From: Obrimoposthia wandeli
Lineage: Eukaryota
Assembly: GCA_977020255.1 (NCBI GenBank)
Contig: CDROCS010002724.1
Span: 1 to 64,000, forward strand
Direction of reading: 5' to 3'
DNA: 64,000 bases
The notes beneath the pieces were generated by a model. That model did not search any database and was not told where the DNA came from. It saw only the letters and a program-made list of their open reading frames with translations. Of the stretch, positions 14,701 through 27,306 are shown one piece after another. Position 1 is the first letter of the stretch. Each line of letters begins with the position of its first letter. The translations under genes and the position numbers were made by a program.

Positions 14701-15095
14701 AAGATCCATTATTAGTTTATAAGTTTGAAGCTTTCGAATTGTTTCAAAAAACAGTTGACAAAATAAATAAAGAGGTTTTATCTTTCTTATTTAAAGGGCA
14801 TTTACCTAGTCAAGATGCTTCACAAGTATCAGAAGCTACCGAACAAAAAAGAGAGCAATTAGATACTCGTAAAGACGATGTTCAAAATTCTTCTCAACAA
14901 GCAATAAATAGGGCTCGTAATCAGCAAACTCAAGAAGAGCAAATTGTTGAAACAATTGTTCGTGATCAACCAAAAATTGGTCGTAACGAGAAAGTTACCA
15001 TTAAAAACATAATGTCTGGTGAAGAAAAAGATGTTAAGTACAAACAAGCTATTCCTTTATTAGAAAAAGGTACTTGGGTATTATATAATAAGTAG
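11745..15095 (+). CDS. secA: Preprotein translocase ATPase SecA
   Basis: MMTGEGKT, DEVDSVLVDDARTPLIISG, ATNMAGRGTDI, QLRGRAGRQGD. Confidence 0.98.
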   Translation: MSVLNSILKIFVGDKQQKDLKSLQPIVEKVRSFEDSLNSLSNDGLRAKTIEFKSKIKEATKTFTETIVKLEVEALTADIDRQEEIYTEIDRLKDESYKTSEAVLLDIMAEAFALVKETAKRFTNNDNIEVTATSFDRELSATREHITLENDKAYWASSWDAAGKEVTWDMIHYDVQLIGGSVLHNGKIAEMMTGEGKTLVSTLPVFLNALTGNGVHVVTVNDYLAKRDRAWMAPIFEFHGLSTDCIDFHQPNSEERRKAYNADITYGTNNEFGFDYLRDNMASSKNDLVQRAPNYAIIDEVDSVLVDDARTPLIISGPVPQGDRHEFNELKPLVADLVSLQNKYLVGVLAETKALLKEGNTKDGGFLLLRVYRGLPKNKALIKFLSQEGIKQILQKTENFYMQDNNKLMPEVDAELWFTVEEKNNQIDLTDRGVAHLSDKTQNDTFFVLPDISVIVGQIDSSEETPEEKASKKEELYRDFSIKSERIHTMNQLLKAYTVFEKDVEYVVMDNKVMIVDEQTGRIMDGRRYSDGLHQALEAKEAVNIEDATQTFATVTLQNYFRMYRKLSGMTGTAITEAGEFWEIYKLDVVEIPTNRPIQRDDKEDLVYKTTREKYNAVIDDVVVLSNQGRPVLIGTTSVEISELLGRMLQMRKIPHNILNAKLHKREADVVAEAGNAGVVTIATNMAGRGTDIKLSEEVKKSGGLAIVGTERHDSRRVDRQLRGRAGRQGDVGSTQFYVALDDNLMRLFGSERIAKMMDRMGLKEGEVIQHSMISKSIERAQKKVEENNFGIRKRLLEYDDIMNAQREFVYKRRRHALDGQRLQIDIANMIYDTCNSIVKQNKMNNDYKNFEFELIRFSSMTSPFSEEDFNKLTEEELTDKLYVIVSAHYKNDTERHADSAFPVIKNVFETEGDRYERIVVPFTDGVKTLQVVTNLKEAYESEGKSLVNDFEKNITLSIIDENWKDHLRKMDELKQTVQNASYEQKDPLLVYKFEAFELFQKTVDKINKEVLSFLFKGHLPSQDASQVSEATEQKREQLDTRKDDVQNSSQQAINRARNQQTQEEQIVETIVRDQPKIGRNEKVTIKNIMSGEEKDVKYKQAIPLLEKGTWVLYNK

Positions 15096-15117
15096 TATTA
15101 TTTATATAAGTAAACAT

Positions 15118-15145
15118 AAAAAGCTCGGTATATACCGAGCTTTTT
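15118..15145. terminator. Intrinsic terminator of secA
   Basis: Perfect palindrome AAAAAGCTCGGTATATACCGAGCTTTTT. Confidence 0.85.
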
Positions 15146-15252
15146 ATGTTTTAAAAAATTAAGATTTAATTACAAAAACTTCACAATTTATTTAACATTT
15201 AAACACATCCAAAAAGTATTTTTACTAAGCTGTAACCTAGCATACTTTTAAA

Positions 15253-16128
15253 ATGGAAAAAAATAAAAGACGTAAACTAGACATTGTTGTTATTTCTGAT
15301 ATTCATTTAGGCACTTTTGGCTGCAGAGCAACAGAACTTCATAATTACCTAAAAACAATAAATCCAGAAATATTAGTTTTAAATGGCGACATTATTGATA
15401 TTTGGCAGTTTAAGAAAAGTTACTTTCCTAAATCACACATGAAGATTATAAAGCAGTTAATGTCTTATATAACTTCAGGAACCAAAGTATACTATATAAC
15501 CGGTAATCATGATGAAATGTTTCGTAAGTTTAAAGGATTTCGTCTTGGTAGTTTTGAGATATTAAACAAGCTAGTGTTAAATATCGATGGTAAAAAAGGT
15601 TGGTTTTTTCATGGAGACGTTTTTGATGTAACCATGCAACACTCTAAATGGCTTGCTAAGTTAGGTAGTATTGGTTATAATGTTTTAATCATGATAAATA
15701 CAGTTGTAAATTGGTTTAGCAATAAACTAGGATATGGAAGGTTATCATTTTCAAAAAAAATAAAAAACAGTGTTAAAAGTGCTGTGAAGTTCATTAATGA
15801 TTTTGAAATAACAGCTTCAGATATCGCTATTTCCAACAACTATGATTATGTTGTATGCGGACATATACATCAGCCTGAAATAAGGTTAATAGAAAATAAA
15901 AATGGAACTACCACTTATTTAAACTCTGGAGACTGGATTGAAAACTTAACCGCCTTAGAGTATCATAATAAATCTTGGTCGTTATATGAATATGAGAAAG
16001 ATGAAATAGCTAAAAATTTACATCCTAATTTAATCACAAATGATCTTGATTTTATAAGTGCAGAAAGTAGTAATAGCAAACTTTTTGAAGAGCTTTTGCA
16101 AGAATTTAACATCCAAAAAACTAAATAA
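15253..16128 (+). CDS. Calcineurin-like metallophosphoesterase, LpxH/PlcP-like
   Basis: SDIHLG, GDIID, GNHDE, HGDVFD, CGHIH, NSGDWIE. Confidence 0.85.
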   Translation: MEKNKRRKLDIVVISDIHLGTFGCRATELHNYLKTINPEILVLNGDIIDIWQFKKSYFPKSHMKIIKQLMSYITSGTKVYYITGNHDEMFRKFKGFRLGSFEILNKLVLNIDGKKGWFFHGDVFDVTMQHSKWLAKLGSIGYNVLIMINTVVNWFSNKLGYGRLSFSKKIKNSVKSAVKFINDFEITASDIAISNNYDYVVCGHIHQPEIRLIENKNGTTTYLNSGDWIENLTALEYHNKSWSLYEYEKDEIAKNLHPNLITNDLDFISAESSNSKLFEELLQEFNIQKTK

Positions 16129-16131
16129 GTT

Positions 16132-17151
16132 ATGAAGATTTTATATGCTTTTCAAGGAACAGGAAACGGGCATGCTAGCAGAGCTATAGAAATTATACCA
16201 TACCTACAACAAAAAGCTGAAGTAGATGTTTTAATTAGCGGATATCAGTGTGAATTAGAGCTCCCTTTTGATGTAAAATATAAATATTATGGATTGAGCT
16301 TTATTTTTGGGAAAAAAGGAGGAGTTGATCTTTGGGAAACTATTAAAAAAGCGAAACTTAAAAACCTCTTTAACGAGATTAAATCAGTTCCTTTAGAAGA
16401 ATACGATTTAATTATCAATGATTTTGAACCTGTTTCTTCTTGGGCTGCAAAACTAAAAAACACTCAAATTATATCATTAAGTCATCAAAATGCAGTTTTA
16501 GATAAAAAAGCTCCTAAATACAAATTATATAGGTTAGAACGATTAATATTAAAATACTATGCTCCTGTAAAAACAAAATTTGGGTTTCACTTCAATTCCT
16601 ATTCTTCTGCTATATTCACACCAATTATACGTAAAAAAATAAGATATAGTAATGTTATTAATAAAGGTCATTACACTGTTTATCTACCTGCATATGAAGA
16701 TAAAAAAATAATTAAAGTACTATCAGAAATTGAAAATGTTAAATGGCAAGTGTTTTCAAGACACACTAAAAACCATGTTTTCAAAAATAATATAACCATA
16801 AAACCAATAAACGGTTCTGATTTTATTAAAAGTATAAGTACTTGTAAAGGAGTAATATGTGGTGCTGGGTTTGAAACACCTGCTGAAGCATTATATTTAC
16901 AAAAAAAACTACTTATAATTCCTATGAAAAATCAATATGAGCAACAATGTAATGCTGCATCTTTAAAGGAAATGGGCGTTCCTGTTTTAAAAAAATTTAA
17001 CAAAAAACAAGTTTCAAAAATTTCATCGTGGGTTGAAGCTAATCAATTAATAAAAGTTGACTATCCTGATGTCACAGAGGATATTTTAGATGCTATTATT
17101 TTGCCTTACTATAAAAACCAAATAGATTTAGCTAAAATTACCATTGGATAA
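16132..17151 (+). CDS. GT-B glycosyltransferase (GT28/MJ1255-like)
   Basis: QGTGNGHASRA, INDFEP, GAGFETPAEAL, QYEQQCNA. Confidence 0.85.
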   Translation: MKILYAFQGTGNGHASRAIEIIPYLQQKAEVDVLISGYQCELELPFDVKYKYYGLSFIFGKKGGVDLWETIKKAKLKNLFNEIKSVPLEEYDLIINDFEPVSSWAAKLKNTQIISLSHQNAVLDKKAPKYKLYRLERLILKYYAPVKTKFGFHFNSYSSAIFTPIIRKKIRYSNVINKGHYTVYLPAYEDKKIIKVLSEIENVKWQVFSRHTKNHVFKNNITIKPINGSDFIKSISTCKGVICGAGFETPAEALYLQKKLLIIPMKNQYEQQCNAASLKEMGVPVLKKFNKKQVSKISSWVEANQLIKVDYPDVTEDILDAIILPYYKNQIDLAKITIG

Positions 17152-17800
17152 TCTCTATTCTTTTGCTTTTTAAAAAAGCATTTGTTCTAGAAAAATGCTC
17201 ACTACCAAACCAACCTCGCCATGCTCCTAAAGGTGACGGGTGCGGCGCTTTAAAAACAGTATGTTTTTCTAGATTAATAACACTTCCTTTTTTTTCTGCA
17301 AACTTTCCCCAAAGTAAAAACACAACATTTTCTTTTTCTTCGGATATTTTACGAATAATAACATCGGTAAATTCTTCCCAACCTTGTTGCTGATGACTTC
17401 CCGCCTCTGCTTCTCTTACAGTTAAAGTTGCATTTAATAATAAAACTCCTTGTGTTGCCCAACGAGATAAATCTCCCGAAACTGGATACGGATTTCCAAT
17501 ATCAGATTCAATTTCTTTAAAAATATTTTTTAATGACGGTGGATGCTTAATTCCGTCTTGAACAGAAAAACACAATCCGTTTGCTTGCCCTTTTCCATGA
17601 TACGGATCTTGCCCAATAATCACTACTTTTAAATCGTTAAAAGAACAGTAATTAAAAGCCGAAAAAACTGCCTCTTTTTTCGGAAAACAGGTGTGATTAT
17701 CATATTGATTATCAACAAAATTTGTTAAATTTTTAAAATATGGTTTTTCAAACTCGGTTTGTAAAATATTTTTCCAGTTATCGCTAATATTTAGTTGCAT
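17138..17800 (-). CDS. ung: Uracil-DNA glycosylase
   Basis: GQDPYHG, QGVLLLN, HPSPL. Confidence 0.97.
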   Translation of the reverse strand: MQLNISDNWKNILQTEFEKPYFKNLTNFVDNQYDNHTCFPKKEAVFSAFNYCSFNDLKVVIIGQDPYHGKGQANGLCFSVQDGIKHPPSLKNIFKEIESDIGNPYPVSGDLSRWATQGVLLLNATLTVREAEAGSHQQQGWEEFTDVIIRKISEEKENVVFLLWGKFAEKKGSVINLEKHTVFKAPHPSPLGAWRGWFGSEHFSRTNAFLKSKRIEIIQW

Positions 17801-17948
17801 AATCCATCTATTTTAGAAAAAATCAAATATACAATTTTAACATTTTTTAGAGTCTAAATAACCGTTCCTTTCTTCAAGTAAGCATTTCATTAAACGAGTC
17901 TTTTATTCTTTTTAATTGCATTGTAGGTTTGCTTAAAAAGAGAAACTT

Positions 17949-18527
17949 ATGATACTTATACGAAAAACCGTTATTAGCTCTTTAATTTTTATAGCAGCGT
18001 TCCTTTTTTTCACTTTTAGTGGTTGTAATAACAACGACAGTATAGTGCCAACATTAAATACAGATGAATACTTTAAATACACTTTAAATAATGGTTCAGA
18101 ACGTGTTTTTGATGGCAATATGAATGCTTACCTAGTTACTAACCCTAACCCCAATTATCAACGATTTTACTTTAGAGCTTCAGCAAATACTACTAATGGT
18201 GGTAGTGTTTTTGTTGATGGCGATTTTACTTTTGATCTTTACAACGCTTTTACCTCTACTACAACTATTCCTTGGGGCAGCCCTGTATCGCTACCTATTA
18301 CATCAAAATTTTACTTTTCAGAACTTTTTTCTGATGACGGGTTTCGGTTTATACCTCATCATGAATACACATCAAGTCCTATAAACTGTACCATAATTAC
18401 GCACGCAACTAATGTTGGCGATTATTTAGAGTTTACATTTTCAGGTACTTATACCGACGCTGTAAACTCATCAAACACAGGTCCTATTGAAGGAAGTGCT
18501 AGAATAAAAAGAGCTGCTGATTTATAA
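17949..18527 (+). CDS. Hypothetical lipoprotein
   Basis: Signal peptide ending in lipobox FSGC; beta-rich mature region. Confidence 0.75.
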   Translation: MILIRKTVISSLIFIAAFLFFTFSGCNNNDSIVPTLNTDEYFKYTLNNGSERVFDGNMNAYLVTNPNPNYQRFYFRASANTTNGGSVFVDGDFTFDLYNAFTSTTTIPWGSPVSLPITSKFYFSELFSDDGFRFIPHHEYTSSPINCTIITHATNVGDYLEFTFSGTYTDAVNSSNTGPIEGSARIKRAADL

Positions 18528-18538
18528 AAACGTAAACT

Positions 18539-19288
18539 ATGTTTCCTAAATTATTAGAATATCAAAATATCACTATTTATACCTACGCTTTTTGTATTAT
18601 TTTAGGTACTTTATTAGCTATACTATATACAAAATCACAAGTAAAAAAAACACTAGATATAACCCTGCCTAATTCATTTTTCTACTTAGTATTTATTTCG
18701 GGTTTTGTTGGAGGAAAGTTATTTTTGTTTTTAGAGAGACCTTTATACTACATTCAAAATCCGCGAAGCATCATCAATATTTTTTCTGGCGGGTTTGTTT
18801 TTTACGGTTCTTTCATATGCATTACTCTAGTGGTTATTTGGTGCTTAAAAAAATATAAAGCTCCTATTTTACCAATGTTAGATATCTTAGCAATTACCAC
18901 AACTATTGTACACGTTATTGGTAGAATAGGTTGTTTTTTTGCTGGATGTTGTTATGGTAAAGAAACAAATTCGTCCTTTGGAGTTGTTTTCTCCAAAACA
19001 CAATCAATTGCCGTACACCCTACACAACTTTATGAAGTTTTTGCTATTCTGGTTATTATGAGTCTGCTTTTATTTATCAAAAAAAAGAAAACATTTAACG
19101 GTCAAATTTTTATATGCTACGTTATTTTATACGCTATTGCTAGAAGCTTTTTAGAAGTTTTTAGAGGTGATAATAGAGGTTTTATTATTGAAGGTTTTCT
19201 TTCTCATTCTCAATTCATTGCCGCTTGTCTTATTATTATCATTAGTTATTTTTATATCAAATTGAATAAAAAAAAGAGTATTAATTAA
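18539..19288 (+). CDS. lgt: Prolipoprotein diacylglyceryl transferase (Lgt) family protein, probably an accessory paralogue
   Basis: GGFVFYG, IGRIGCFFAGCCYG, HPTQLYE, Y.IARSFLEVFR, SQFI; multi-TM. Confidence 0.85.
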   Translation: MFPKLLEYQNITIYTYAFCIILGTLLAILYTKSQVKKTLDITLPNSFFYLVFISGFVGGKLFLFLERPLYYIQNPRSIINIFSGGFVFYGSFICITLVVIWCLKKYKAPILPMLDILAITTTIVHVIGRIGCFFAGCCYGKETNSSFGVVFSKTQSIAVHPTQLYEVFAILVIMSLLLFIKKKKTFNGQIFICYVILYAIARSFLEVFRGDNRGFIIEGFLSHSQFIAACLIIIISYFYIKLNKKKSIN

Positions 19289-19300
19289 AATTATCTTATT

Positions 19301-19869
19301 ATGAAAAAATCAATTTTAAAAACAGTTTTACCTACAACTCTATTAATCATCGCAATGGCTATAATAGGCTCTGGCTGTGGAGATACAAGCCCTAGCATAG
19401 ACCCAAGTAATGATTGTAGCGATGCTGAAACAGTAATAGAAACAGCACTCGGTAATTTATCAACTAATTCTATGGATTTGCAAATACACGAATATACTTT
19501 TGAAACAGTCGTTGTGAGATTATACGAAATTGGTTATCAAAGTTTACAACTCAAATAATACTGTGATTGTCGTGCTGGTTAATATATATGAGGTGATAGT
19601 TGGTGCTCATGTTATAATACTTTTTATTATTATATGAATATGCAGCTATTGGTGAATTTTTGATACTTACGGTAACCTATATTACATTAGAATTCGGTGG
19701 AGATGGTTTAAATTCTTCTATGGGACATACTTCTACAACTACTTTTCCATATACTAGTGGTAACATTACTTTTTTAAGTTCTAAATTTGTAGATAGTTCT
19801 AGCACAGGAGGTGGACCAATAACGGATAACGGAATTCCTAAAATATATTTTAAGTTTACAGCTAACTAA
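19301..19869 (+). pseudogene. Disrupted lipoprotein gene
   Basis: 5' part (lipobox GSGC) stops at 19558; about 100 nt of broken frames; coherent C-terminal frame to TAA 19869, followed by a terminator. Confidence 0.65.
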
Positions 19870-19892
19870 CTTATTTAAAAAATTAGTTAAAC

Positions 19893-19922
19893 AAACGAGT
19901 GTTAATCTTAACACTCGTTTTT
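19893..19922 (+). terminator. Intrinsic terminator closing the lipoprotein-lgt operon
   Basis: AAACGAGTGTTAA-TC-TTAACACTCGTTT followed by TT. Confidence 0.8.
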
Positions 19923-19936
19923 AATTTATCATTTAT

Positions 19937-20866
19937 ATGCTTACCATAATATCATATATAAAAACACATTTTAAACAAGATTTTAAAGCGTCAACTTATA
20001 TACTTACTCTCTTGTTTTTAGGACTCTTTATTTATGTGAACCATACCACAAAACTCCCTACTCTCTTTTTTAAGAACCAACAAAAAGAGGCCGTTATCTA
20101 CATATACTATTTTTTGTTTTTCGGTTGTGCTTATTATACTACAATTATAATAACAGCAATTACAAAATCTGATTGGAGGTTTACAAAATCATTTTATTTT
20201 TGGTTTACAAGTATCATTGCTATTCTATTAGTTAGCTTTCGTTTTGGCTTTTTAGAATTTTTAAATTGGATACAAAAAAACATAGATCCTCAAAAAGTTA
20301 ATTTCTATATAAAGGTTATTGCTAGAAGTACTCGTTTTATAATATTTACTTTCGGAATTCTTTTTTTCTATTATTTATTTGAAAAAAGTAATACGAATTA
20401 TTATGGATTCTCAATTAAAAATACACGTTGGAAACCTTATTTTTTATTACTTTTATTTGTACTTCCCTTTATTATTATAGCATCTTTTCAACCTAGTTTT
20501 TTAAAACAATATCCAATGCTTGGAAATGTTGGGCCTGCCATAAATAAATGGACAGCTTTAGCTATTTACGAACCTATTTACTTAATTGATTTCATTGCTA
20601 TTGAATGGTTTTTTAGAGGTTTTTTAATATTAGGTACAGTTAAATACTTAGGCTCAAAAGCTGTTTTACCAATGGTTGTTTTATATGCTTTTTTTCATAT
20701 AGGAAAACCAACAGGTGAAATTATCGGTTCAGTTTTTGGTGGTTATATACTAGGTATTGTTTCACTACATAGTCGCTCTATAATTGGCGGAATTATAATT
20801 CATATGGGAGTTGCATTTTTAATGGATCTATTTGCTGTTATTCAAAAATTGGATAATTATTTATAA
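19937..20866 (+). CDS. CPBP (Abi/CAAX-type) intramembrane metalloprotease
   Basis: IEWFFRG, FFHIGKP, IIIH motifs; many TM segments. Confidence 0.85.
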   Translation: MLTIISYIKTHFKQDFKASTYILTLLFLGLFIYVNHTTKLPTLFFKNQQKEAVIYIYYFLFFGCAYYTTIIITAITKSDWRFTKSFYFWFTSIIAILLVSFRFGFLEFLNWIQKNIDPQKVNFYIKVIARSTRFIIFTFGILFFYYLFEKSNTNYYGFSIKNTRWKPYFLLLLFVLPFIIIASFQPSFLKQYPMLGNVGPAINKWTALAIYEPIYLIDFIAIEWFFRGFLILGTVKYLGSKAVLPMVVLYAFFHIGKPTGEIIGSVFGGYILGIVSLHSRSIIGGIIIHMGVAFLMDLFAVIQKLDNYL

Positions 20867-20870
20867 GACA

Positions 20871-20920
20871 ACATTCCTCTTATCAAACGAACACTTGCTT
20901 TAATAATGCATACATCCTCA
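20871..20920 (+). promoter_or_regulatory. LytTR-type direct repeats
   Basis: ACATTCCTC 20871, ACACTTGCT 20891, ACATCCTCA 20912 (20-21 bp period). Confidence 0.45.
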
Positions 20921-20963
20921 CTATTTATATGATAACTTTATAATATATAAAAAAACATATATT

Positions 20964-21482
20964 ATGAAAGTAAAAAATATTTTATTGATTGTAACATTAA
21001 CAATTTGCACAATTGCTTTTGCAAACACCTCAGAAAAACCAAAAAAAGTAATTAAAAAAGTAAACACAATAAAAAATTGTTGCTCATTTTCTGGAAATTT
21101 TAAATATAATGGAAAGTGGGAATTTGGAGGTAAATTTACTATAAATTTTGGATTAGCTGGTACACCACCAAACGGAGGAGGGAATTCGAACACAGGTTGG
21201 GGTGAAATAGTTTTAGGAGAAAACGCAACTCATGGAAGCTATTTAATAATTACACCTCCAAAAGAATATATAGGAAGAACCATTGAAATTGTGAGTAGTA
21301 ATATTGTTATAAATAAAATTAATTGCGGCCAAGAACTATTGCAATTTATTAATTTAAAAGCTAAAAAAAGTAAAATACTTTTAAAAGAAAAAACCATCAT
21401 AAAAATTGTAAATTTACCTAAAACAGGTAACGTAATTCACAAAAAATTACAGCACAAAAAACAAGGATATAAAAAACGCTAA
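20964..21482 (+). CDS. Hypothetical secreted protein
   Basis: Signal peptide, Gly-rich centre, basic C-terminus; no family recognised. Confidence 0.65.
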   Translation: MKVKNILLIVTLTICTIAFANTSEKPKKVIKKVNTIKNCCSFSGNFKYNGKWEFGGKFTINFGLAGTPPNGGGNSNTGWGEIVLGENATHGSYLIITPPKEYIGRTIEIVSSNIVINKINCGQELLQFINLKAKKSKILLKEKTIIKIVNLPKTGNVIHKKLQHKKQGYKKR

Positions 21483-21495
21483 TAAAATAAAATAC

Positions 21496-24372
21496 GTGAA
21501 ACAAAGAAAACTTCATATTACACTACTTGCACTAATAGTATGGAGTTTATCTTTTTCACAACAGTATACAAATTACTCTATAAAAGATGGTTTACCTAGT
21601 AATCATGTATATCGAATTTCACAAGACAATGAAGGTTTTATTTGGTTAATTACTGATAAAGGAATTTCTAAATTCGATGGTGAAAATTTTAAAAATTTCA
21701 CTATCAAAGATGGCTTACCATCTAATGACATTTGGCACATAAGAATTACACCTGATAATAAAGTTTGGTTTTTCTCTAAATCAAGTAAACTTGGTTATAT
21801 TTTTAATGACAAAGTATACTCTTTTGGTTCTTTTAGAAAAAAAGTTTTGTATCCAAGAACAATATTACAGTCTAAAAATATCATTAATTTTAATGATGGT
21901 TCATTTTATTATTCTTTAAAAGACAGTATTTGGGGAGCCTCTTCTAATTATCTTTTGGAGGATAGTAATTTAACAAAACAAAAAGTAATACACCCAATAA
22001 TTAACTTTCATGCTTTAATTAAAGACAGTCTTTATTTTTTTAATAAAAACCATAAAAAATCTTTTTTTATTAAAAAAGGTATTTTTCAAACTATTTCAGA
22101 ACACGGACAAGCAAATGACAGCCTATATATTAGTACAGCCAAACAGTATTATATAATTGAAAATTTTAATTCAGAAAAAGTTTATTTAATTTCTTATGCT
22201 TCACAAAATTTACCCGAAAATTTAAAACATTTTAGGTATCATAATGTGAATAATCATGTTCAGCTAACAGGGATGGATTTTGTAAGTTATTTAGGCAAAA
22301 ATGGAACATTAAAAAACACAATTCACATTCCCGAAAAATTAAATACTCATTTTTCTTTTATAGATAATACAGGTAATATTTGGTCTGCTACGTTTAATAA
22401 AGGTGTTTTTTTACTTCCAAAAGAGAAGAAATTAACTAAAATATTAGCTAAAAATAAAAAAATACAGCAATTAAAATTGATAAACAATAATATATATGCA
22501 GGTATTTACAAAGAAGGTTTTTTTAAAATAAATAACTCTTTAAAACCTATTATAAAAAACAATAGTTTTCAACATTCTATTTCATTTTTTAAAGACATAA
22601 ATACTTTTATTTTTTCTTCTGAAGATTTTTTATACGCTTATAAAAACAAAAAAACATCAATAATTAAAACCTCTAAAAAAAACTCTTTTAAAAATGATTT
22701 CGCAAAAAAAATCATAAATCATAAAGATTTTTTATATGTTAATAACGCTTTTGGCATTTTTAAAATAAACCCTATTAACTTTAGTATAATTAAAAAATAT
22801 CCGTTGTATGGAGTTAACTCTTTCTCAAGTACAAATACCAATCTGTTTTTTGCAAATCAATCTGGTTTATTTATCTTAAAAAACGATAGTATATTAAAAC
22901 TACAATCTAATAAATTATTTAATCAACCTGTATTAACCCAAGCTAATTATACACAAAAAAAAGTAATTATAGGTACTGAAGGTAATGGAGCTTATATAAC
23001 TAATGGAAAAACAGTTTCATTTATTAAAAAGACAAATAATTTAAGTATTCAAGATATTTTTGTTGACCTTAACAACAATATTTGGTTAGCTACAGCTAAA
23101 GGAGTTCATAAAGCAAGTAAACAAAATAATAATTATGTAATTACACAATCTTTTTATGAATCTGACGGGTTAATTTCTAATAACATAAATAGTGTTGTTG
23201 TAAAAAACGATTCTTTATACACGGGTACGGATATTGGCCTTTCTATAATTTATTTACAGAAAGAACCTGTAAATCAATTACAAAAAATCTATGTAAAATC
23301 AATAATTATAAACGAAACCTCTTATACAGGAGATACGATAATTGCTTCTTATAAAAAAAACGGTATTTTTTCTACCTCTTTTGGTACAATTAACTTTAGC
23401 AATCAACAAAACTTAAGCTATCAATATAAATTAGAGCCTCTTCAAAGTAATTGGATAACAACAACGACACCTTATATTAATTTTACAGATCTAAAACCAA
23501 ATACCTATTCTTTACAATTAAAAGTAAGTAACCATCATAAAGAAGAAAAAAGAAAAACTATTTATATTACAATTACTCCATTATGGTATCAGACTTTATG
23601 GTTTAAAATTGGTTTTGTTTTATTAGTAATTGGTTTTTTTTATTTATTTAATAAATGGGCAACAAAAAAAATTAAAGCAAACACACGTAAAAGTATTTTA
23701 AAAAAACAAAAAGATATTGAATATGAACTTTACGCATTACGTTCGCAAATGAACCCTCATTTTGTTTTCAATTCATTAAATGCAATTCAGTATTACATGA
23801 CTAAAAACGAGGTTGAATTATCCGAGAAATACTTAGTTAAATTTTCTCGTTTGATACGCATGTTTTTTGATTTTTCTAGACAAAAAAACATAACTTTAGA
23901 GCAAGAATTATTGCTTTTAAAGAGTTATTTAGAAATAGAAAAAATGAGATTTGGAGATGATTTTAAATTTAGTTTTAATATTGATAAAACACTTAACTTA
24001 GAAACAAAAATACCTACAATGTTATTACAACCCATTGTAGAAAATGCAGTAAACCATGGCCTGTTTCACAAAAAAGGAAAAGGACTTATTGATATTTCTT
24101 TAAAAAAATCAACCTTTAAAAATGAATTTATTATTGCTATAAGAGATAATGGAGTAGGTTTTTTAAAATCAAAAGAGATACAGAAAAAATCAATAAAAAA
24201 ACATACTTCAAAATCTACCCTAATAATTGCTGATAAAATAAAACTAATCAATCAATCTTTGCAATGGCATATTTCTCAAGAAATTATTGATTTATCTGGA
24301 AAAAACAGTTCTGGTACTTTAGTATTGTTAACCTTTAAAAAAATTAAACATGATAAAAGCTATATTAGTTGA
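21496..24372 (+). CDS. LytS-type sensor histidine kinase with periplasmic beta-propeller and Y_Y_Y domain
   Basis: YSIKDGLPSNHV propeller repeats, TM, LRSQMNPHFVFNSLN, QPIVENAVNHG, DNGVG; GTG start. Confidence 0.92.
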   Translation: MKQRKLHITLLALIVWSLSFSQQYTNYSIKDGLPSNHVYRISQDNEGFIWLITDKGISKFDGENFKNFTIKDGLPSNDIWHIRITPDNKVWFFSKSSKLGYIFNDKVYSFGSFRKKVLYPRTILQSKNIINFNDGSFYYSLKDSIWGASSNYLLEDSNLTKQKVIHPIINFHALIKDSLYFFNKNHKKSFFIKKGIFQTISEHGQANDSLYISTAKQYYIIENFNSEKVYLISYASQNLPENLKHFRYHNVNNHVQLTGMDFVSYLGKNGTLKNTIHIPEKLNTHFSFIDNTGNIWSATFNKGVFLLPKEKKLTKILAKNKKIQQLKLINNNIYAGIYKEGFFKINNSLKPIIKNNSFQHSISFFKDINTFIFSSEDFLYAYKNKKTSIIKTSKKNSFKNDFAKKIINHKDFLYVNNAFGIFKINPINFSIIKKYPLYGVNSFSSTNTNLFFANQSGLFILKNDSILKLQSNKLFNQPVLTQANYTQKKVIIGTEGNGAYITNGKTVSFIKKTNNLSIQDIFVDLNNNIWLATAKGVHKASKQNNNYVITQSFYESDGLISNNINSVVVKNDSLYTGTDIGLSIIYLQKEPVNQLQKIYVKSIIINETSYTGDTIIASYKKNGIFSTSFGTINFSNQQNLSYQYKLEPLQSNWITTTTPYINFTDLKPNTYSLQLKVSNHHKEEKRKTIYITITPLWYQTLWFKIGFVLLVIGFFYLFNKWATKKIKANTRKSILKKQKDIEYELYALRSQMNPHFVFNSLNAIQYYMTKNEVELSEKYLVKFSRLIRMFFDFSRQKNITLEQELLLLKSYLEIEKMRFGDDFKFSFNIDKTLNLETKIPTMLLQPIVENAVNHGLFHKKGKGLIDISLKKSTFKNEFIIAIRDNGVGFLKSKEIQKKSIKKHTSKSTLIIADKIKLINQSLQWHISQEIIDLSGKNSSGTLVLLTFKKIKHDKSYIS

Positions 24373-25087
24373 TGATGAAGAAAAAGCTTTAGAAGGATTA
24401 TTATTGAAGGTTAAACAATTTTTTCCTGAAATTGAAATTTTAAAAACGTTTCAAAATCCACAAGAAGCCGTAAATTTCATAAATACAAACACGCCTGATA
24501 TTCTTTTTTTAGATGTAGAAATGCCTGTTATTAATGGTTTTGACGTGTTATCTTTAATTAAAAACCCTAATTTCGAAATTATTTTTGTTACCGCATATAA
24601 TAATTATGCCGTAGAAGCTTTTCAACATTGCGCGATTGGTTATATTTTAAAACCGATAGATAATGATGAACTTAAAACGACTATTGAAAATGCTATTAAG
24701 GGCGTTAATCAAAAAAAGACGCTGCATAAAAATGAAGCTTTATTAAACAGGTTAATCAACACAACATCAAATGCAAATAAGTTAATTATACCTACAAGTA
24801 AAGGATTACTTTTTGTTCCTTACAATGAAATTTTACATATTGAAGGATATGAAGGTTACACCAAAATACATACCATTAACACTTCTGAAATTATAAGTTC
24901 CTATAACATAGGGAAGTATGAAAAACTACTGAATGATAATTTTTATAAATGCCATAAATCTCATATTGTAAACCTAAAAAAAGTACGTCATTTTGAGAAT
25001 GAAGGATATATTATATTAGAAAATAAAAAAAGAGTGCCAGTTTCTAAAACCAAACGAAAAGAATTTATAGATTTGTTCTCTACATAA
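24350..25087 (+). CDS. LytTR-family response regulator
   Basis: VDDE, FLDVEMP, FVTAY, YILKP receiver; CHKSHIVN LytTR domain. Confidence 0.95.
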   Translation: MIKAILVDDEEKALEGLLLKVKQFFPEIEILKTFQNPQEAVNFINTNTPDILFLDVEMPVINGFDVLSLIKNPNFEIIFVTAYNNYAVEAFQHCAIGYILKPIDNDELKTTIENAIKGVNQKKTLHKNEALLNRLINTTSNANKLIIPTSKGLLFVPYNEILHIEGYEGYTKIHTINTSEIISSYNIGKYEKLLNDNFYKCHKSHIVNLKKVRHFENEGYIILENKKRVPVSKTKRKEFIDLFST

Positions 25088-25098
25088 AAACTTTTTTT

Positions 25099-27306
25099 TT
25101 GACTAAAAATATTTCAGAAAAGACACTTCAAGATTTAGAATTCACAACAGTTTTAGAACAAGTTGCAGAACATTGTATTACAAATTTAGGTAAAGAAAAA
25201 ACACTTGCGGTTCAGCCTATATCAAATAAAAGAAAATTATTTTTCGAATTAAATTTAGTAAACGAATACCTATCTTCTTTTGAAAACGAAAACAGACTTC
25301 CGAATCATTTTTTTGAAGATATTACAGAAGAAACTAAACGATTAGCCATAGAAAATAGTTTTTTAGAAACCGAAGCTTTTTTAAGAGTTGCTACAGTTAC
25401 AGAGACTGTAAACGAAATGAAAAAGTTTTTAAAAAAATTTCAACCCTACTACCCTACTTTATTTACTTTAAGTGATCAAATAGAACTTACTACTTTTGTT
25501 TCTGACAGTATAAAAGAAATAATTACATCTTACGGTAAAGTTGCCGATAACGCTTCGCCTACTTTAAGACAAATACGTAAAGATGTTAATAATGTTCGTG
25601 GAAAAATATCTGAAAGCTTTACGCATGCCTTAACCAGAAATATTACCAACGGTTATTTAGATGATATTAAAGAAACTATTGTAGATAACCAGCGTGTTTT
25701 GGCTGTTACAGCAATGCATCGCCGTAAAATTAAAGGAAGTTTATTAGGCGCTTCTAAATCGGGTAATATCGTTTATATAGCACCTCAGGCTACCTTAGCA
25801 TATAGTAGAGAATTGCAAAATTTAATTTATGAAGAAAAGCAAGAGGTTGTTAAAATATTAAGAGCCTTGGCTAGTGAAATTCATCCTTACACGCCTTTAT
25901 TAAACGAATATACGGTCTTTTTAACGCATTTAGATGCTGTGGCTGCTAAGGCAAAATACGCGAAAAGCATCAACGGATTATTACCAAAAATAACCAAAGA
26001 GAAAAAGATTCTTTTTAAAGATGCATATCATCCTGTTTTATGGAAAAAAAATAAAGATCAGAATAAAAAAACATTTCCTCAAACGATTCAATTAGACGAG
26101 AAACAGCAAATTATTGTCATTTCTGGTCCCAATGCTGGTGGAAAAAGTATCACTTTAAAAACAATTGGCTTATTACAGTTGATGTTACAAAGTGGATTAT
26201 TGATTCCTGTTCACGAACGGAGTGAAACCACTTTATTCAACACCATATTAACGGATATTGGAGATAATCAATCCATAGAAAATCAACTAAGTACTTATAG
26301 TTATCGATTAAAAAATATGCGCTCGTTTTTGAAAAAATGCGACGATAGCACCTTGTTTTTAATTGATGAATTCGGTACCGGTTCTGACCCTGAATTAGGT
26401 GGTGCTTTGGCGGAGATTTTCTTAGAAGAATTTTATGAAAGAAAAGCATTCGGTATTATTACAACGCATTATGCTAATTTAAAGGTATTAGCGAACGAAC
26501 TAGATAATGTTACCAACGCAAACATGCAGTTTGATGAACGTACTTTAGAGCCTTTATATAAATTATTTATAGGACAAGCAGGTAGTTCATTTACTTTTGA
26601 AGTTGCTCAGAAAAACGGAATTCCGTACAGCTTAATCAACAGAGCTAAGAAAAGAGTAGAAACAGAAAAAATTAGACTGGATAAAACTATTTCTAAGCTT
26701 CAGAAAGAGCGTAATCGTTTACAAAAAACGTCCGACAGTTTGGTTGAGCAGAAATCTAAAGGTCAAGAACATATTGAAAGCTTGCTGAAAAAAGAAGATA
26801 AGTTACAAAATAAACTTTCTGGTTTTCAAGAATTATACGACAACAACCAACGAATGTTAACATTAGGTAGAAAAACAAATGAGTTGTTGAATAAGTATTT
26901 TCAAACCAATAACAAAAAGGAATTATCTACCGAATTTTTTAAATGGGTTGCTGCAGAAAATACAAAACGCATAAAAAAAGCGCCTCTTAAAAAATTAACG
27001 AAGCTAGAAAAAAAACAAGATAAAATTACTACTCAAAAACAACAAGAAGCTATAAAAAAGGTAGAAAAAGAAGTGCTTCAAAAAGTAGTAAAAGTTAGAG
27101 CAGAAAAGAAAGAAGAAGCTAAAAAGATAGCCATTGAAAAAGCGGCTTACCTATATAAAATAAATGATCGTGTTCGCTTAATTGACGGTAATTCTGTTGG
27201 TACCATTGATAAAATTGAAAAGAAAAATGTTTTTATCAATTATGGTTTATTTACAACCAAAGCAAAACTAGAACAGTTAGAATTGGTAGAACGTGCTAAA
27301 AAATAA
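25099..27306 (+). CDS. mutS2: MutS2 family protein without a C-terminal Smr domain
   Basis: SGPNAGGKS, STYSYRL, IDEFGTGSDP, TTHY; ends at a KOW/SH3-like domain. Confidence 0.93.
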   Translation: MTKNISEKTLQDLEFTTVLEQVAEHCITNLGKEKTLAVQPISNKRKLFFELNLVNEYLSSFENENRLPNHFFEDITEETKRLAIENSFLETEAFLRVATVTETVNEMKKFLKKFQPYYPTLFTLSDQIELTTFVSDSIKEIITSYGKVADNASPTLRQIRKDVNNVRGKISESFTHALTRNITNGYLDDIKETIVDNQRVLAVTAMHRRKIKGSLLGASKSGNIVYIAPQATLAYSRELQNLIYEEKQEVVKILRALASEIHPYTPLLNEYTVFLTHLDAVAAKAKYAKSINGLLPKITKEKKILFKDAYHPVLWKKNKDQNKKTFPQTIQLDEKQQIIVISGPNAGGKSITLKTIGLLQLMLQSGLLIPVHERSETTLFNTILTDIGDNQSIENQLSTYSYRLKNMRSFLKKCDDSTLFLIDEFGTGSDPELGGALAEIFLEEFYERKAFGIITTHYANLKVLANELDNVTNANMQFDERTLEPLYKLFIGQAGSSFTFEVAQKNGIPYSLINRAKKRVETEKIRLDKTISKLQKERNRLQKTSDSLVEQKSKGQEHIESLLKKEDKLQNKLSGFQELYDNNQRMLTLGRKTNELLNKYFQTNNKKELSTEFFKWVAAENTKRIKKAPLKKLTKLEKKQDKITTQKQQEAIKKVEKEVLQKVVKVRAEKKEEAKKIAIEKAAYLYKINDRVRLIDGNSVGTIDKIEKKNVFINYGLFTTKAKLEQLELVERAKK

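What the first reader, a model, noticed from the sequence alone, without database searches (positions are those of the whole stretch)
17949..25087. Accessory block with a dedicated Lgt paralogue between two lipoprotein genes, plus CPBP protease and LytS/LytTR pair
Seen: lipoprotein (FSGC) - Lgt-family gene - lipoprotein (GSGC) form a tight operon (11-12 nt gaps) closed by a terminator, followed co-directionally by a CPBP protease, a secreted orphan, a propeller histidine kinase and a LytTR regulator, inserted between ung and mutS2. The Lgt is short (249 aa) with a GCFFAGCCYG motif. Established: Lgt lipidates lipobox cysteines and is normally one housekeeping gene; substrate-dedicated Lgt paralogues are known from a few specialised clusters. 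Inference: a private lipoprotein-maturation module (special acylation and/or CPBP processing of its own clients) under two-component control. This is my best candidate for an undescribed system in the window.
Basis: partly seen in the sequence, partly recalled or inferred. Interest (0 to 1): 0.7.

Follow-up and report, generated by a model that had tools for sequence, protein, structure and literature searches.

The report
Extra Lgt enzyme with private client
A marine flavobacterium carries, besides its normal lipoprotein-lipidating enzyme Lgt, a second, differently built Lgt that always travels with one lipoprotein gene bearing an unusual conserved signal peptide, which looks like a natural enzyme-and-private-substrate pair that nobody has described.

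Summary
Between ung and mutS2 lies a 7.3 kb block: lipoprotein, 249-aa Lgt (GRIGCFFAGCCYG), second lipoprotein, terminator, CPBP homologue, secreted 172-aa protein, propeller/LytS-type kinase and LytTR regulator. In five genus-mates without this Lgt, ung and mutS2 are adjacent, so the block is an insertion.

The organism is close to Tenacibaculum haliotis. A canonical long Lgt sits on another contig of the assembly, and every relative checked has one too. The short Lgt ("LgtS") is rare: 12 of 401 Flavobacteriaceae genomes sampled. It belongs to a Cys-type Lgt clade that supplies the only Lgt, beside lspA, in Nitrospinota and Desulfobacterota, so it is probably active.

New here: in 20 of 20 informative loci the gene just 3' of lgtS encodes a lipoprotein with the same 26-aa signal peptide (…LLIIAVFIIGSGC, Gly at -3), whatever its mature domain. 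In one genome the two genes are fused. Neighbouring lipoproteins have ordinary signal peptides.

The kinase/regulator pair accompanies the cassette in 15 of 19 loci but also occurs without it. CPBP homologues were found only in lgtS genomes (5 of 5).

The client gene is broken in the window's assembly. An independent contig suggests an intact-length version.

Dedicated lipidation is inferred, not shown. I found no earlier report of this cassette in this scan.

The parts
17138..17800 (-). ung (uracil-DNA glycosylase), left flank of the insertion
   Evidence: PF03167. It is adjacent to mutS2 in five relatives lacking the block.
17949..18527 (+). lipA: 192-aa lipoprotein with an ordinary lipobox (FTFSGC then NNND), no Pfam family
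   Evidence: It is 62% identical to the T. haliotis copy. Family members occur in Winogradskyella-type clusters (L112, L133) and in the cluster L193, which has no lgtS.
18539..19288 (+). lgtS: 249-aa Cys-type Lgt paralogue (GRIGCFFAGCCYG; Tyr at the His103 position)
   Evidence: PF01790 at 184 bits, below the NCBIfam equivalog cut-offs. Motif table, tree. Found in 12/401 Flavobacteriaceae.
19301..19558 (+). lipB 5' part: the conserved client signal peptide MKKSILKTVLPTTLLIIAMAIIGSGC plus 59 residues, ended by a stop codon in the assembly
   Evidence: It is 82% identical to residues 1-85 of the intact 197-aa T. haliotis protein.
19660..19869 (+). lipB 3' part in another reading frame (matches residues 125-197 of the intact protein)
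   Evidence: The region 19506-19695 differs in an independent contig of run X1.
19893..19920 (+). intrinsic terminator closing lipA-lgtS-lipB
   Evidence: It is conserved in T. haliotis and P. marinus (alignment A1).
19937..20866 (+). CPBP (Rce1-like) intramembrane protease homologue, 309 aa, with partly degenerate motifs (IEWFFR, FFH, HMGVA)
   Evidence: PF02517 at 31 bits. NCBIfam MrtA-like at 43 bits, far below the cut-off. Homologues occur only in lgtS-bearing genomes, 5/401.
20964..21482 (+). 172-aa secreted protein (signal peptidase I type signal, AFA-NT), no family
   Evidence: It is 91% identical in T. haliotis and absent from the Polaribacter locus.
21496..24372 (+). sensor histidine kinase: periplasmic Reg_prop/Y_Y_Y sensor, one membrane span, LytS-type His_kinase core
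   Evidence: Orthologues follow the cassette in 15 of 19 informative loci.
24350..25087 (+). response regulator with LytTR DNA-binding domain
   Evidence: PF00072 + PF04397. Orthologues of at least 51% identity also occur in genomes without lgtS.
25099..27306 (+). mutS2, right flank of the insertion
   Evidence: PF00488.
15050..19850 (.). patch of low identity to T. haliotis (64-88% against 94-98% outside it); its right edge falls inside lipB
   Evidence: Sliding-window identity.

Best explanation
The block is a mobile accessory module of marine Flavobacteriaceae. Its core is a two-gene cassette. The first gene is a second Lgt of the Cys type (LgtS). The second, immediately downstream and probably translationally coupled, encodes one prolipoprotein (the client).

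The client's 26-residue signal peptide (consensus MKKxxLKTxLPxxLLIIAVFIIG-S-G-C) is conserved even where the mature domain has been swapped. It has Gly at position -3 of the lipobox, where the other lipoproteins of these bacteria have F/I/L/V.

Most likely mechanism (inferred): after Sec export, LgtS transfers the diacylglyceryl group to the Cys of this atypical lipobox, which the housekeeping long Lgt (His103/Asn146/Glu151 type) handles poorly. The ordinary pathway, presumably LspA, then matures the protein into a surface or periplasmic lipoprotein.

The cassette sits in the variable cargo region upstream of a propeller-sensor kinase and a LytTR regulator, which presumably control its expression. 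In some lineages, this one included, a co-inherited CPBP homologue may further process or guard the lipidated client.

Shown: the paralogy, the insertion, the conserved adjacency, the signal-peptide class, and retention of the catalytic Arg/Tyr/Glu residues. Inferred: enzyme activity, client specificity, regulation by the two-component pair, and any role for the CPBP.
For: Paralogy. There are two Lgt genes in every lgtS genome checked. A canonical Lgt of a T. haliotis-like organism lies on C6527 of the same assembly.

Accessory status. LgtS is in 12/401 family genomes and 7/121 genus-level genomes. The site is empty in five relatives.

Likely activity. LgtS keeps Y26, G104, G142, R143, G145, G154, Y235, R239, E243 and R246. 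The same H103Y/N146C/E151C pattern is found in the sole Lgt of a Nitrospinaceae genome (G087). In a Desulfobacter genome (G088) the only other match is faint (34.7 bits). Lgt genes of this type lie between lspA and holA in those phyla.

Tree. LgtS is a monophyletic Flavobacteriaceae branch (100*) inside a Bacteroidota branch of the Cys-type clade, separate from the canonical clade.

Client link.
- The downstream gene is a lipoprotein with the special signal peptide in 20/20 informative loci.
- Its mature domains belong to at least four unrelated types: MopE-like PF11617 repeats, the lipB family, the '145-aa' family, and others.
- Gly is at -3 in 16/16 clients, against F/I/L/V in 23/27 other lipoproteins of the same loci. 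Mean pairwise signal-peptide identity is 0.51 against 0.21.
- The IIG[SA][GSA]C signal-peptide context occurs only at this gene in three genomes scanned.
- Synonymous differences in the signal-peptide codons show that the constraint is on the protein.
- lgtS and the client form a single ORF in G147.
- All 14 known lipB-family proteins carry the signal peptide, and for at least six the longest contig has the same length as that of an lgtS hit.

Literature. His103 with arm-2 is proposed to set protein-substrate specificity, and the signature motif to select the lipid donor (PMC4728403; preprint 10.1101/2025.03.27.645668). LgtS differs from the canonical enzyme at exactly these elements.

CPBP. 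All five genomes with a homologue are lgtS genomes (hypergeometric about 1e-8, ignoring relatedness).
Against: There is no biochemical evidence of any kind.

The conserved signal peptide could be inherited with the cassette, with domain swaps downstream of a fixed 5' end, rather than being selected by enzyme recognition.

Cys-type Lgts serve as general enzymes in other phyla, so nothing in the fold demands narrow specificity.

The related short Lgt of Cytophagales has no adjacent lipoprotein.

The client gene is disrupted in this window's assembly, although that may be an assembly error.

The kinase/regulator orthologues occur without lgtS, and I found no shared operator motif.

The CPBP has degenerate catalytic motifs, and two of the five co-occurring homologues are distant (34-35% identity) and unlinked.

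Co-occurrence counts are not phylogenetically independent.
Confidence: 0.5

Rival explanations
1. LgtS is simply a second, general-purpose Lgt carried on a mobile surface-lipoprotein island. It adds lipidation capacity when the island's many lipoproteins are induced. The conserved client signal peptide reflects shared ancestry of the cassette, not recognition.
For: Cys-type Lgts are the sole, housekeeping enzyme in other phyla. Many loci hold several further lipoproteins with ordinary lipoboxes next to lgtS. Redundant Lgt paralogues are known in actinobacteria (preprint 10.1101/2025.03.27.645668).
Against: The same lipoprotein families occur in an orthologous cluster without lgtS (L193). Minimal loci hold only lgtS plus the Gly(-3) client (L110, L126, L130). 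The signal peptide is conserved at protein level across swapped mature domains, while neighbouring lipoproteins' signal peptides drift freely.
Confidence: 0.3
2. LgtS uses a different lipid donor, or makes a different lipid anchor, from the housekeeping enzyme. The client would then receive a chemically distinct anchor that changes its sorting or release. Specificity would lie in the lipid, not the peptide.
For: The substitutions N146C, N149A and E151C fall in the signature motif, which the E. coli structure paper assigns to phosphatidylglycerol head-group recognition (PMC4728403).
Against: The same motif is present in sole-Lgt lineages, where it must serve all lipoproteins. There are no lipid data. 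This reading does not explain the private signal peptide.
Confidence: 0.1
3. The genes are neighbours without a functional link beyond co-transfer. LgtS is a decaying or inactive paralogue, and the block is a variable surface-antigen or bacteriocin-immunity-like island (LytTR regulator plus CPBP/Abi protein, as in Gram-positive bacteriocin loci).
For: The client gene is broken in the assembly. The CPBP motifs are degenerate. The distribution is sparse. CPBP/Abi plus LytTR is a known combination in bacteriocin loci (my own knowledge).
Against: lgtS is intact in all 20+ loci, with every catalytic Arg/Tyr/Glu residue kept, at 52-82% identity across genera. That indicates purifying selection. The adjacency is kept at many different chromosomal sites. 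No small bacteriocin-like peptide genes were seen. The kinase has a large periplasmic propeller sensor, not a peptide-pheromone type.
Confidence: 0.1

Closest known systems
Housekeeping phosphatidylglycerol:prolipoprotein diacylglyceryl transferase Lgt (E. coli, PDB 5AZB/5AZC; PF01790)
   Same: Same family and fold-level architecture. It keeps R143, R239, Y26, Y235, E243, R246 and the glycines of the 13-residue motif.
   Different: It is 249 aa and carries H103Y, N146C, N149A and E151C. It is accessory rather than universal, and it coexists with a canonical Lgt. It scores below the NCBIfam equivalog cut-offs.
Cys-type ('CC') Lgt of Nitrospinota, Desulfobacterota and Nitrospirota; the variant is noted in preprint 10.1101/2025.03.27.645668
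   Same: Same motif GRxGCFFAGCCYG, same length, same clade.
   Different: In those phyla it lies in an lspA-lgt-holA context and was the only Lgt in the Nitrospinaceae genome checked. Here it is a paralogue tied to one lipoprotein gene in a regulated accessory island.
Second Lgt homologues of actinobacteria (M. smegmatis MSMEG_5408; Streptomyces Lgt1/Lgt2)
   Same: A second Lgt beside a major one. The M. smegmatis copy also has N146C.
   Different: No fixed client gene or private signal peptide is reported for those. MSMEG_5408 also has Y26H, which LgtS does not. That pattern resembles a different, more divergent Lgt-like class seen in other Flavobacteriaceae.
Dedicated sorting enzyme plus single target pairs (e.g. 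MrtJ with a JDVT-CTERM protein; myxosortase MrtX with MYXO-CTERM)
   Same: A two-gene neighbourhood of a membrane processing enzyme and one target that carries a recognisable sorting signal with an invariant Cys. It is sporadically distributed. A CPBP protease is proposed to act next to a lipidated Cys, with Lgt named as the candidate lipidating enzyme (PMC11980579).
   Different: Here the signal is N-terminal (a lipobox), the dedicated enzyme is the lipid transferase itself, and the CPBP is optional and has degenerate motifs.
LytS/LytR-type (BtsS/BtsR-like) two-component systems
   Same: A His_kinase (PF06580) core paired with a receiver-LytTR regulator. The regulator scores 124 bits on the BtsR model, below its cut-off.
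   Different: The sensor is a periplasmic Reg_prop/Y_Y_Y propeller with one membrane span, not the 5TM LytS sensor. The targets are unknown.

Membership tests
Lgt family (PF01790) | Full-length match to the LGT profile above the gathering score | tested here: met
   184 bits against a cut-off of 24.9, profile positions 2-238 of 240.
Lgt family (PF01790) | Essential Arg143 and Arg239, plus Tyr26, Tyr235, Glu243, Arg246 and Gly104/142/145/154 (E. coli numbering) | tested here: met
   All are present in the window protein and in 18/18 Flavobacteriaceae LgtS sequences.
Canonical (E. coli-type, housekeeping) Lgt | His103 of the HGGL motif, and Asn146 and Glu151 of the signature motif | tested here: not met
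   Tyr, Cys and Cys respectively. In E. coli, H103Y and E151A/Q fail to complement (PMC4728403) and N146A does not restore growth (preprint 10.1101/2025.03.27.645668).
Canonical (E. coli-type, housekeeping) Lgt | NCBIfam equivalog score; being the single Lgt of the genome | tested here: not met
   The best equivalog, NF000778, scores 160.7 against 334, and TIGR00544 scores 104.6 against 118.9. A second, long Lgt is present in every lgtS genome checked.
Lgt family (PF01790) | Diacylglyceryl transfer to a lipobox cysteine | not testable with these tools
   This needs an enzyme assay or mass spectrometry. It is supported only by the fact that the same motif class is the sole Lgt elsewhere.
CPBP / Rce1-like intramembrane glutamic protease (PF02517) | Profile match above the gathering score | tested here: met
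   31.2 bits against 22.4, residues 214-293.
CPBP / Rce1-like intramembrane glutamic protease (PF02517) | Catalytic motifs EExxxR, FxxxH, HxxxN/D | tested here: inconclusive
   Read directly from the sequence: IEWFFR (one Glu only), FFH, and HMGVA (no Asn/Asp at +4). The Glu-Arg motif (IEWFFR) reads the same in the Polaribacter copy. No alignment to a solved CPBP could be obtained.
Myxosortase-type sorting proteases (MrtX/MrtA) | NCBIfam model score; a C-terminal Cys-containing sorting signal in nearby targets | tested here: not met
   The MrtA model scores 43 bits against a cut-off of 200. None of the island's proteins ends in a membrane helix with a Cys motif.
LytS-type sensor kinase | His_kinase PF06580 core next to a LytTR regulator | tested here: met
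   PF06580 at 78 bits. The regulator gene overlaps the kinase gene by 23 nt.
LytS-type sensor kinase | Multi-span 5TM LytS sensor domain | tested here: not met
   Pfam finds Reg_prop and Y_Y_Y in a roughly 700-residue extracytoplasmic part instead.
Bacterial lipoprotein (client lipB and lipA) | Signal peptide ending in a lipobox with Cys at +1 | tested here: met
   lipA has ...FTFSG-C. The client has ...AIIGSG-C, with Gly at -3, which departs from the usual [LVI] at that position. Actual lipidation was not tested.

The most novel reading that the evidence does not exclude
LgtS is a substrate-dedicated Lgt. It recognises a private 26-residue signal peptide with a Gly(-3) lipobox that the housekeeping Lgt cannot use. 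The cell can therefore lipidate one regulated surface protein independently of the general pathway, and where a CPBP is present, that protease acts on the lipidated client. This would be the first natural Lgt-client pair. It would give a direct handle on how Lgt reads its protein substrate (the His103/arm-2 question).
Probability: 0.35. Interest if true: 0.75.

Novelty: new variant of a known kind. Interest (0 to 1): 0.55.

Why it matters
Lgt is an antibiotic target whose protein-substrate recognition is still unresolved, because there is no structure with a prolipoprotein. A naturally occurring second Lgt would help here. It differs at exactly the residues proposed to bind the peptide (His103) and to select the lipid (Asn146/Glu151). 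It is also locked to one client with a distinctive lipobox.

That gives a ready-made pair of enzymes and a pair of signal peptides for swap experiments. It also extends the idea of a dedicated sorting enzyme with a single target, known for exosortases, rhombosortases and myxosortases, to the first step of lipoprotein biogenesis.

Finally, it flags a variable, two-component-linked surface-lipoprotein locus in marine Flavobacteriaceae, a group that includes fish pathogens of the genus Tenacibaculum.

Tried and rejected
1. 'The short length and Cys motif make this Lgt odd or inactive.' Rejected: the same motif class is the only Lgt in the Nitrospinaceae genome checked, and Lgt genes of this type sit next to lspA in Nitrospinota and Desulfobacterota.

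2. 'lipA is a private client too.' Not supported: it has an ordinary lipobox and an unconserved signal peptide, and its family is present in a cluster without lgtS.

3. 'The kinase/regulator is specific to the module.' Rejected: orthologues of at least 51% identity occur in genomes without lgtS. There they sit behind a DUF7935 gene and other cargo.

4. A hunt for a shared operator motif (8-mers upstream of the modules in 17 loci) gave only AT-rich words.

5. The sigma-70 promoter scan found fewer sites than shuffled sequence does, and it does not model Bacteroidota promoters.

6. Fold of the client lipB: the model is a beta-sandwich of modest confidence (pLDDT 67) with no PDB match at E <= 0.001. 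The weak CBM35- and PHR-like hits were not used.

7. Aligning the CPBP to a solved structure failed.

8. A second LspA linked to the module: not found. T. haliotis and P. marinus have one lspA, located elsewhere.

9. The contig as a chimera of two strains (suggested by the low-identity patch): not supported. An independent contig of run X1 spans both sides.

10. Two distant CPBP homologues in lgtS genomes lie in unrelated housekeeping contexts, so their co-occurrence is weak evidence.

Full report
**What is in the window**

| Gene | Coordinates | Notes |
|---|---|---|
| lipA | 17949-18527 | 192 aa; signal peptide ends FTFSG-C; no family |
| lgtS | 18539-19288 | 249 aa; PF01790 at 184 bits; motif GRIGCFFAGCCYG |
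| lipB | starts 19301 | signal peptide MKKSILKTVLPTTLLIIAMAIIGSG-C |
| terminator | 19893-19920 | 12-bp stem |
| CPBP homologue | 19937-20866 | PF02517 at 31 bits |
| secreted protein | 20964-21482 | 172 aa; no family |
| kinase | 21496-24372 | 958 aa; Reg_prop, Y_Y_Y and His_kinase PF06580 |
| regulator | 24350-25087 | receiver + LytTR |

The flanks are ung (minus strand) and mutS2. The gaps around lgtS are 11 and 12 nt.

**Whose genome it is, and the other Lgt**

The window is the first 64 kb of a 286 kb contig in a 1.35 Gb mixed assembly. That assembly holds 21 Lgt matches from many bacteria. The window is 94-98% identical in DNA to Tenacibaculum haliotis over most of the compared stretch.

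A long canonical Lgt 96.7% identical to that of T. haliotis lies on contig C6527. By inference this is the same organism's housekeeping gene. T. haliotis, Polaribacter marinus and two Flavobacteriaceae MAGs each have one long Lgt (about 275-316 aa) and one short one.

**It is accessory and inserted**

The short Lgt was found in 12 of 401 evenly drawn Flavobacteriaceae genomes. It was found in 7 of 121 genomes of the genus-level group of T. haliotis. In 81 family genomes, 55 have a single Lgt match, and in the rows listed that match is the long form.

In five relatives that lack the short Lgt, ung and mutS2 are directly adjacent and divergent. The whole 7.3 kb from lipA to the regulator is therefore one insertion.

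**What kind of Lgt it is**

I aligned the sequences to E. coli Lgt (locus; table). LgtS keeps Y26, G104, G142, R143, G145, G154, Y235, R239, E243 and R246. It has Tyr for His103, Cys for Asn146, Ala for Asn149 and Cys for Glu151.

In E. coli, H103Y and E151A/Q fail to complement. The signature motif is assigned to phosphatidylglycerol recognition and the HGGL motif to lipobox binding (PMC4728403). A 2025 preprint notes that 'CC' replaces N146/E151 in distant Lgts and that His103 can be Y/W/F. It proposes that His103 with arm-2 sets protein-substrate specificity (10.1101/2025.03.27.645668).

The Cys-type motif is not a defect. A Nitrospinaceae chromosome has only this type, and a Desulfobacter chromosome has it plus only a faint second hit. 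In Nitrospinota, Desulfobacterota and Nitrospirota the gene lies between lspA and holA.

A maximum-likelihood tree of 86 Lgts (quick search, SH-aLRT support) separates two clades:
- a canonical clade (96*), holding E. coli, other bacteria of the assembly and the long Bacteroidota Lgts;
- a Cys-type clade (86).

Inside the Cys-type clade, the short Lgts of Cytophagales and Flavobacteriaceae form one branch (100*), and the Flavobacteriaceae LgtS are monophyletic (100*).

The Cytophagales copies lie after a small PaaI-like gene, with no lipoprotein or kinase nearby.

**The conserved partner**

I mapped genes around lgtS in 19 Flavobacteriaceae loci and two more reached through the lipB family. 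The chromosomal sites differ:
- between ung and mutS2 only in Tenacibaculum and Polaribacter;
- after a DUF7935 gene in Olleya/Winogradskyella-like genomes;
- elsewhere in Lutibacter, Kordia and a Cellulophaga MAG.

In every locus where sequence continues past lgtS (20 of 20), the next gene starts 2-20 nt after lgtS or overlaps it. It encodes a lipoprotein with the same signal peptide: 26 residues, consensus MKKxxLKTxLPxxLLIIAVFIIG-[SAP]-[GSA]-C.

The mature parts are unrelated:
- MopE-like metal-binding repeats (PF11617) in most loci;
- the lipB family in Tenacibaculum, Polaribacter, Kordia and Cellulophaga;
- a roughly 145-aa family in Olleya;
- others.

In one genome (G147) lgtS and the client are one 375-aa reading frame.

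| Feature | Clients (n = 16) | Other lipoproteins of the same loci (n = 27) |
|---|---|---|
| Residue at -3 | Gly in 16/16 | F/I/L/V in 23/27 |
| Signal-peptide length | 26 aa in 13/16 | 17-21 aa in most |
| Residues after the Cys | variable | usually an acidic NDDD-type stretch |
| Mean pairwise signal-peptide identity | 0.51 | 0.21 |

A back-translated pattern for IIG[SA][GSA]C was scanned over five lgtS genomes. The pattern could not match the clients of two of them. In the other three, the only hit in a signal-peptide context was the lgtS-adjacent gene. Third-codon-position differences in these codons show that the constraint is on the peptide.

The lipB family has only 14 clusters in the 5.8-billion-protein collection. 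All carry the signal peptide, and for at least six the longest contig has the same length as that of an lgtS hit.

**The rest of the block**

Kinase and LytTR regulator orthologues follow the cassette in 15 of 19 informative loci. Regulator orthologues of 51-67% identity also occur in genomes without lgtS. There the pair lies behind the same DUF7935 gene, and the space between holds other cargo. That cargo can be a single secreted protein of about 580 aa. In L193 it is lipoproteins of the same families as in the lgtS clusters, including a lipA relative, but with no lgtS and no Gly(-3) client.

So the two-component pair heads a variable cargo locus, and the lgtS-client cassette is one optional cargo.

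CPBP homologues at E <= 1e-30 were found in 5 of 401 genomes, all among the 12 with lgtS. Three are in the lgtS locus (64-93% identity). Two are distant (34-35%) and sit in housekeeping contexts. Its motifs are partly degenerate (IEWFFR, FFH, HMGVA).

CPBP proteases such as Rce1 and myxosortase cut next to a lipidated cysteine, and Lgt has been named as the candidate lipidating enzyme for myxosortase targets (PMC11980579). That makes a link plausible but untested.

**State of the client gene here**

In the assembly, lipB is split. Residues 1-85 are in one frame, followed by a stop at 19556-19558. Residues 125-197 are in another frame. About 40 codons between them are unrecognisable.

This spot is also the right edge of a 4.8 kb patch (about 15050-19850) that is only 64-88% identical to T. 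haliotis. That pattern suggests an imported divergent segment.

A Logan contig of run X1, which holds 87% of the stretch's words and may be the source sample, spans 17900-20634. It agrees with the window except for a net +3 nt at 19506-19522 and 164 nt in place of 19551-19695 (145 nt). These are the positions and sizes of the gaps the window shows against the intact homologues: 3 nt, then 5+4+4+6 = 19 nt in alignment A1.

I therefore think an in-frame client gene exists in the sample, and that the window carries a consensus error or a variant strain. I could not read the 164 letters.

**Fold of the client**

The AlphaFold model of T. haliotis LipB (14-sequence alignment) is a beta-sandwich with mean pLDDT 67. 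It has no PDB match at E <= 0.001. This says little beyond 'small secreted beta domain'.

**Interpretation**

Firmly shown:
- an accessory Cys-type Lgt paralogue;
- its insertion with a regulated island;
- an invariant pairing with one lipoprotein gene that has a private, Gly(-3) signal peptide.

Inferred:
- LgtS lipidates that client because the canonical enzyme does not accept it (my estimate 0.5);
- the kinase and regulator control the operon;
- the CPBP acts on the product.

The main rival is a general second Lgt carried along with the cassette (0.3). A different lipid donor (0.1) and mere co-transfer or decay (0.1) are less likely.

**Novelty**

Lgt paralogues and the CC motif variant are in the literature. 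Four full-text searches for Lgt paralogues, second Lgts and CPBP-Lgt links turned up no description of the cassette or its signal-peptide class.

It is a new variant of two known kinds: Lgt paralogy, and dedicated enzyme-target pairs.

Noticed in passing
window 15050-19850: A 4.8 kb patch (metallophosphoesterase-like gene, glycosyltransferase-like gene, ung, lipA, lgtS, 5' of lipB) is only 64-88% identical to T. haliotis, while both sides are 94-98% identical. It looks like a recombination import, and its right end lies inside lipB, where the gene is disrupted.
   Followed up: partly
window 19506-19695: A Logan contig of run X1 has small indels at 19506-19522 and 164 other letters in place of 19551-19695. 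The assembly may be wrong here, or two strains coexist.
   Followed up: partly
G000 contigs C309, C2315, C425, C1539 (Lgt matches with 4-18 in-frame TGA): Several Lgt matches in the same assembly contain only TGA stops. That suggests bacteria using genetic code 4 among the co-assembled organisms. The assembly also holds four Tenacibaculum-like long Lgts (C6527, C2610, C3344, C2312) but only one lgtS.
   Followed up: no
L144-L149 (e.g. G064:C2:187888-188550, G026:C1:748243-748914): A third, more divergent Lgt-like class (about 245-262 aa, 80-99 bits) occurs in at least 15 of the 81 Flavobacteriaceae genomes sampled. It has His at the Tyr26 position, Phe at His103, Cys at Asn146 and Ile at Glu151. 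This is the same Y26H/N146C pattern reported for the second Lgt of M. smegmatis. There are also fusion proteins of about 600 aa with an Lgt-like domain (L150-L152).
   Followed up: no
L055 1170-2710 and L087 7236-8792: Two Bdellovibrionota MAGs carry two Cys-type Lgt genes in tandem.
   Followed up: no
L193-L199 and L111, L112, L127, L129, L132, L133: There is a conserved frame in many Flavobacteriaceae: peptidase M1, patatin, DUF7935 (minus strand), variable secreted or lipoprotein cargo, propeller kinase, LytTR regulator. The cargo region is hypervariable between genomes.
   Followed up: partly
L125 7927-8385 (oriented coordinates; G097): A second lipoprotein in an lgtS locus (145-aa family, upstream of lgtS) also has a client-like signal peptide ending FIGTSC with Gly at -3. 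Some loci may therefore have two clients.
   Followed up: no
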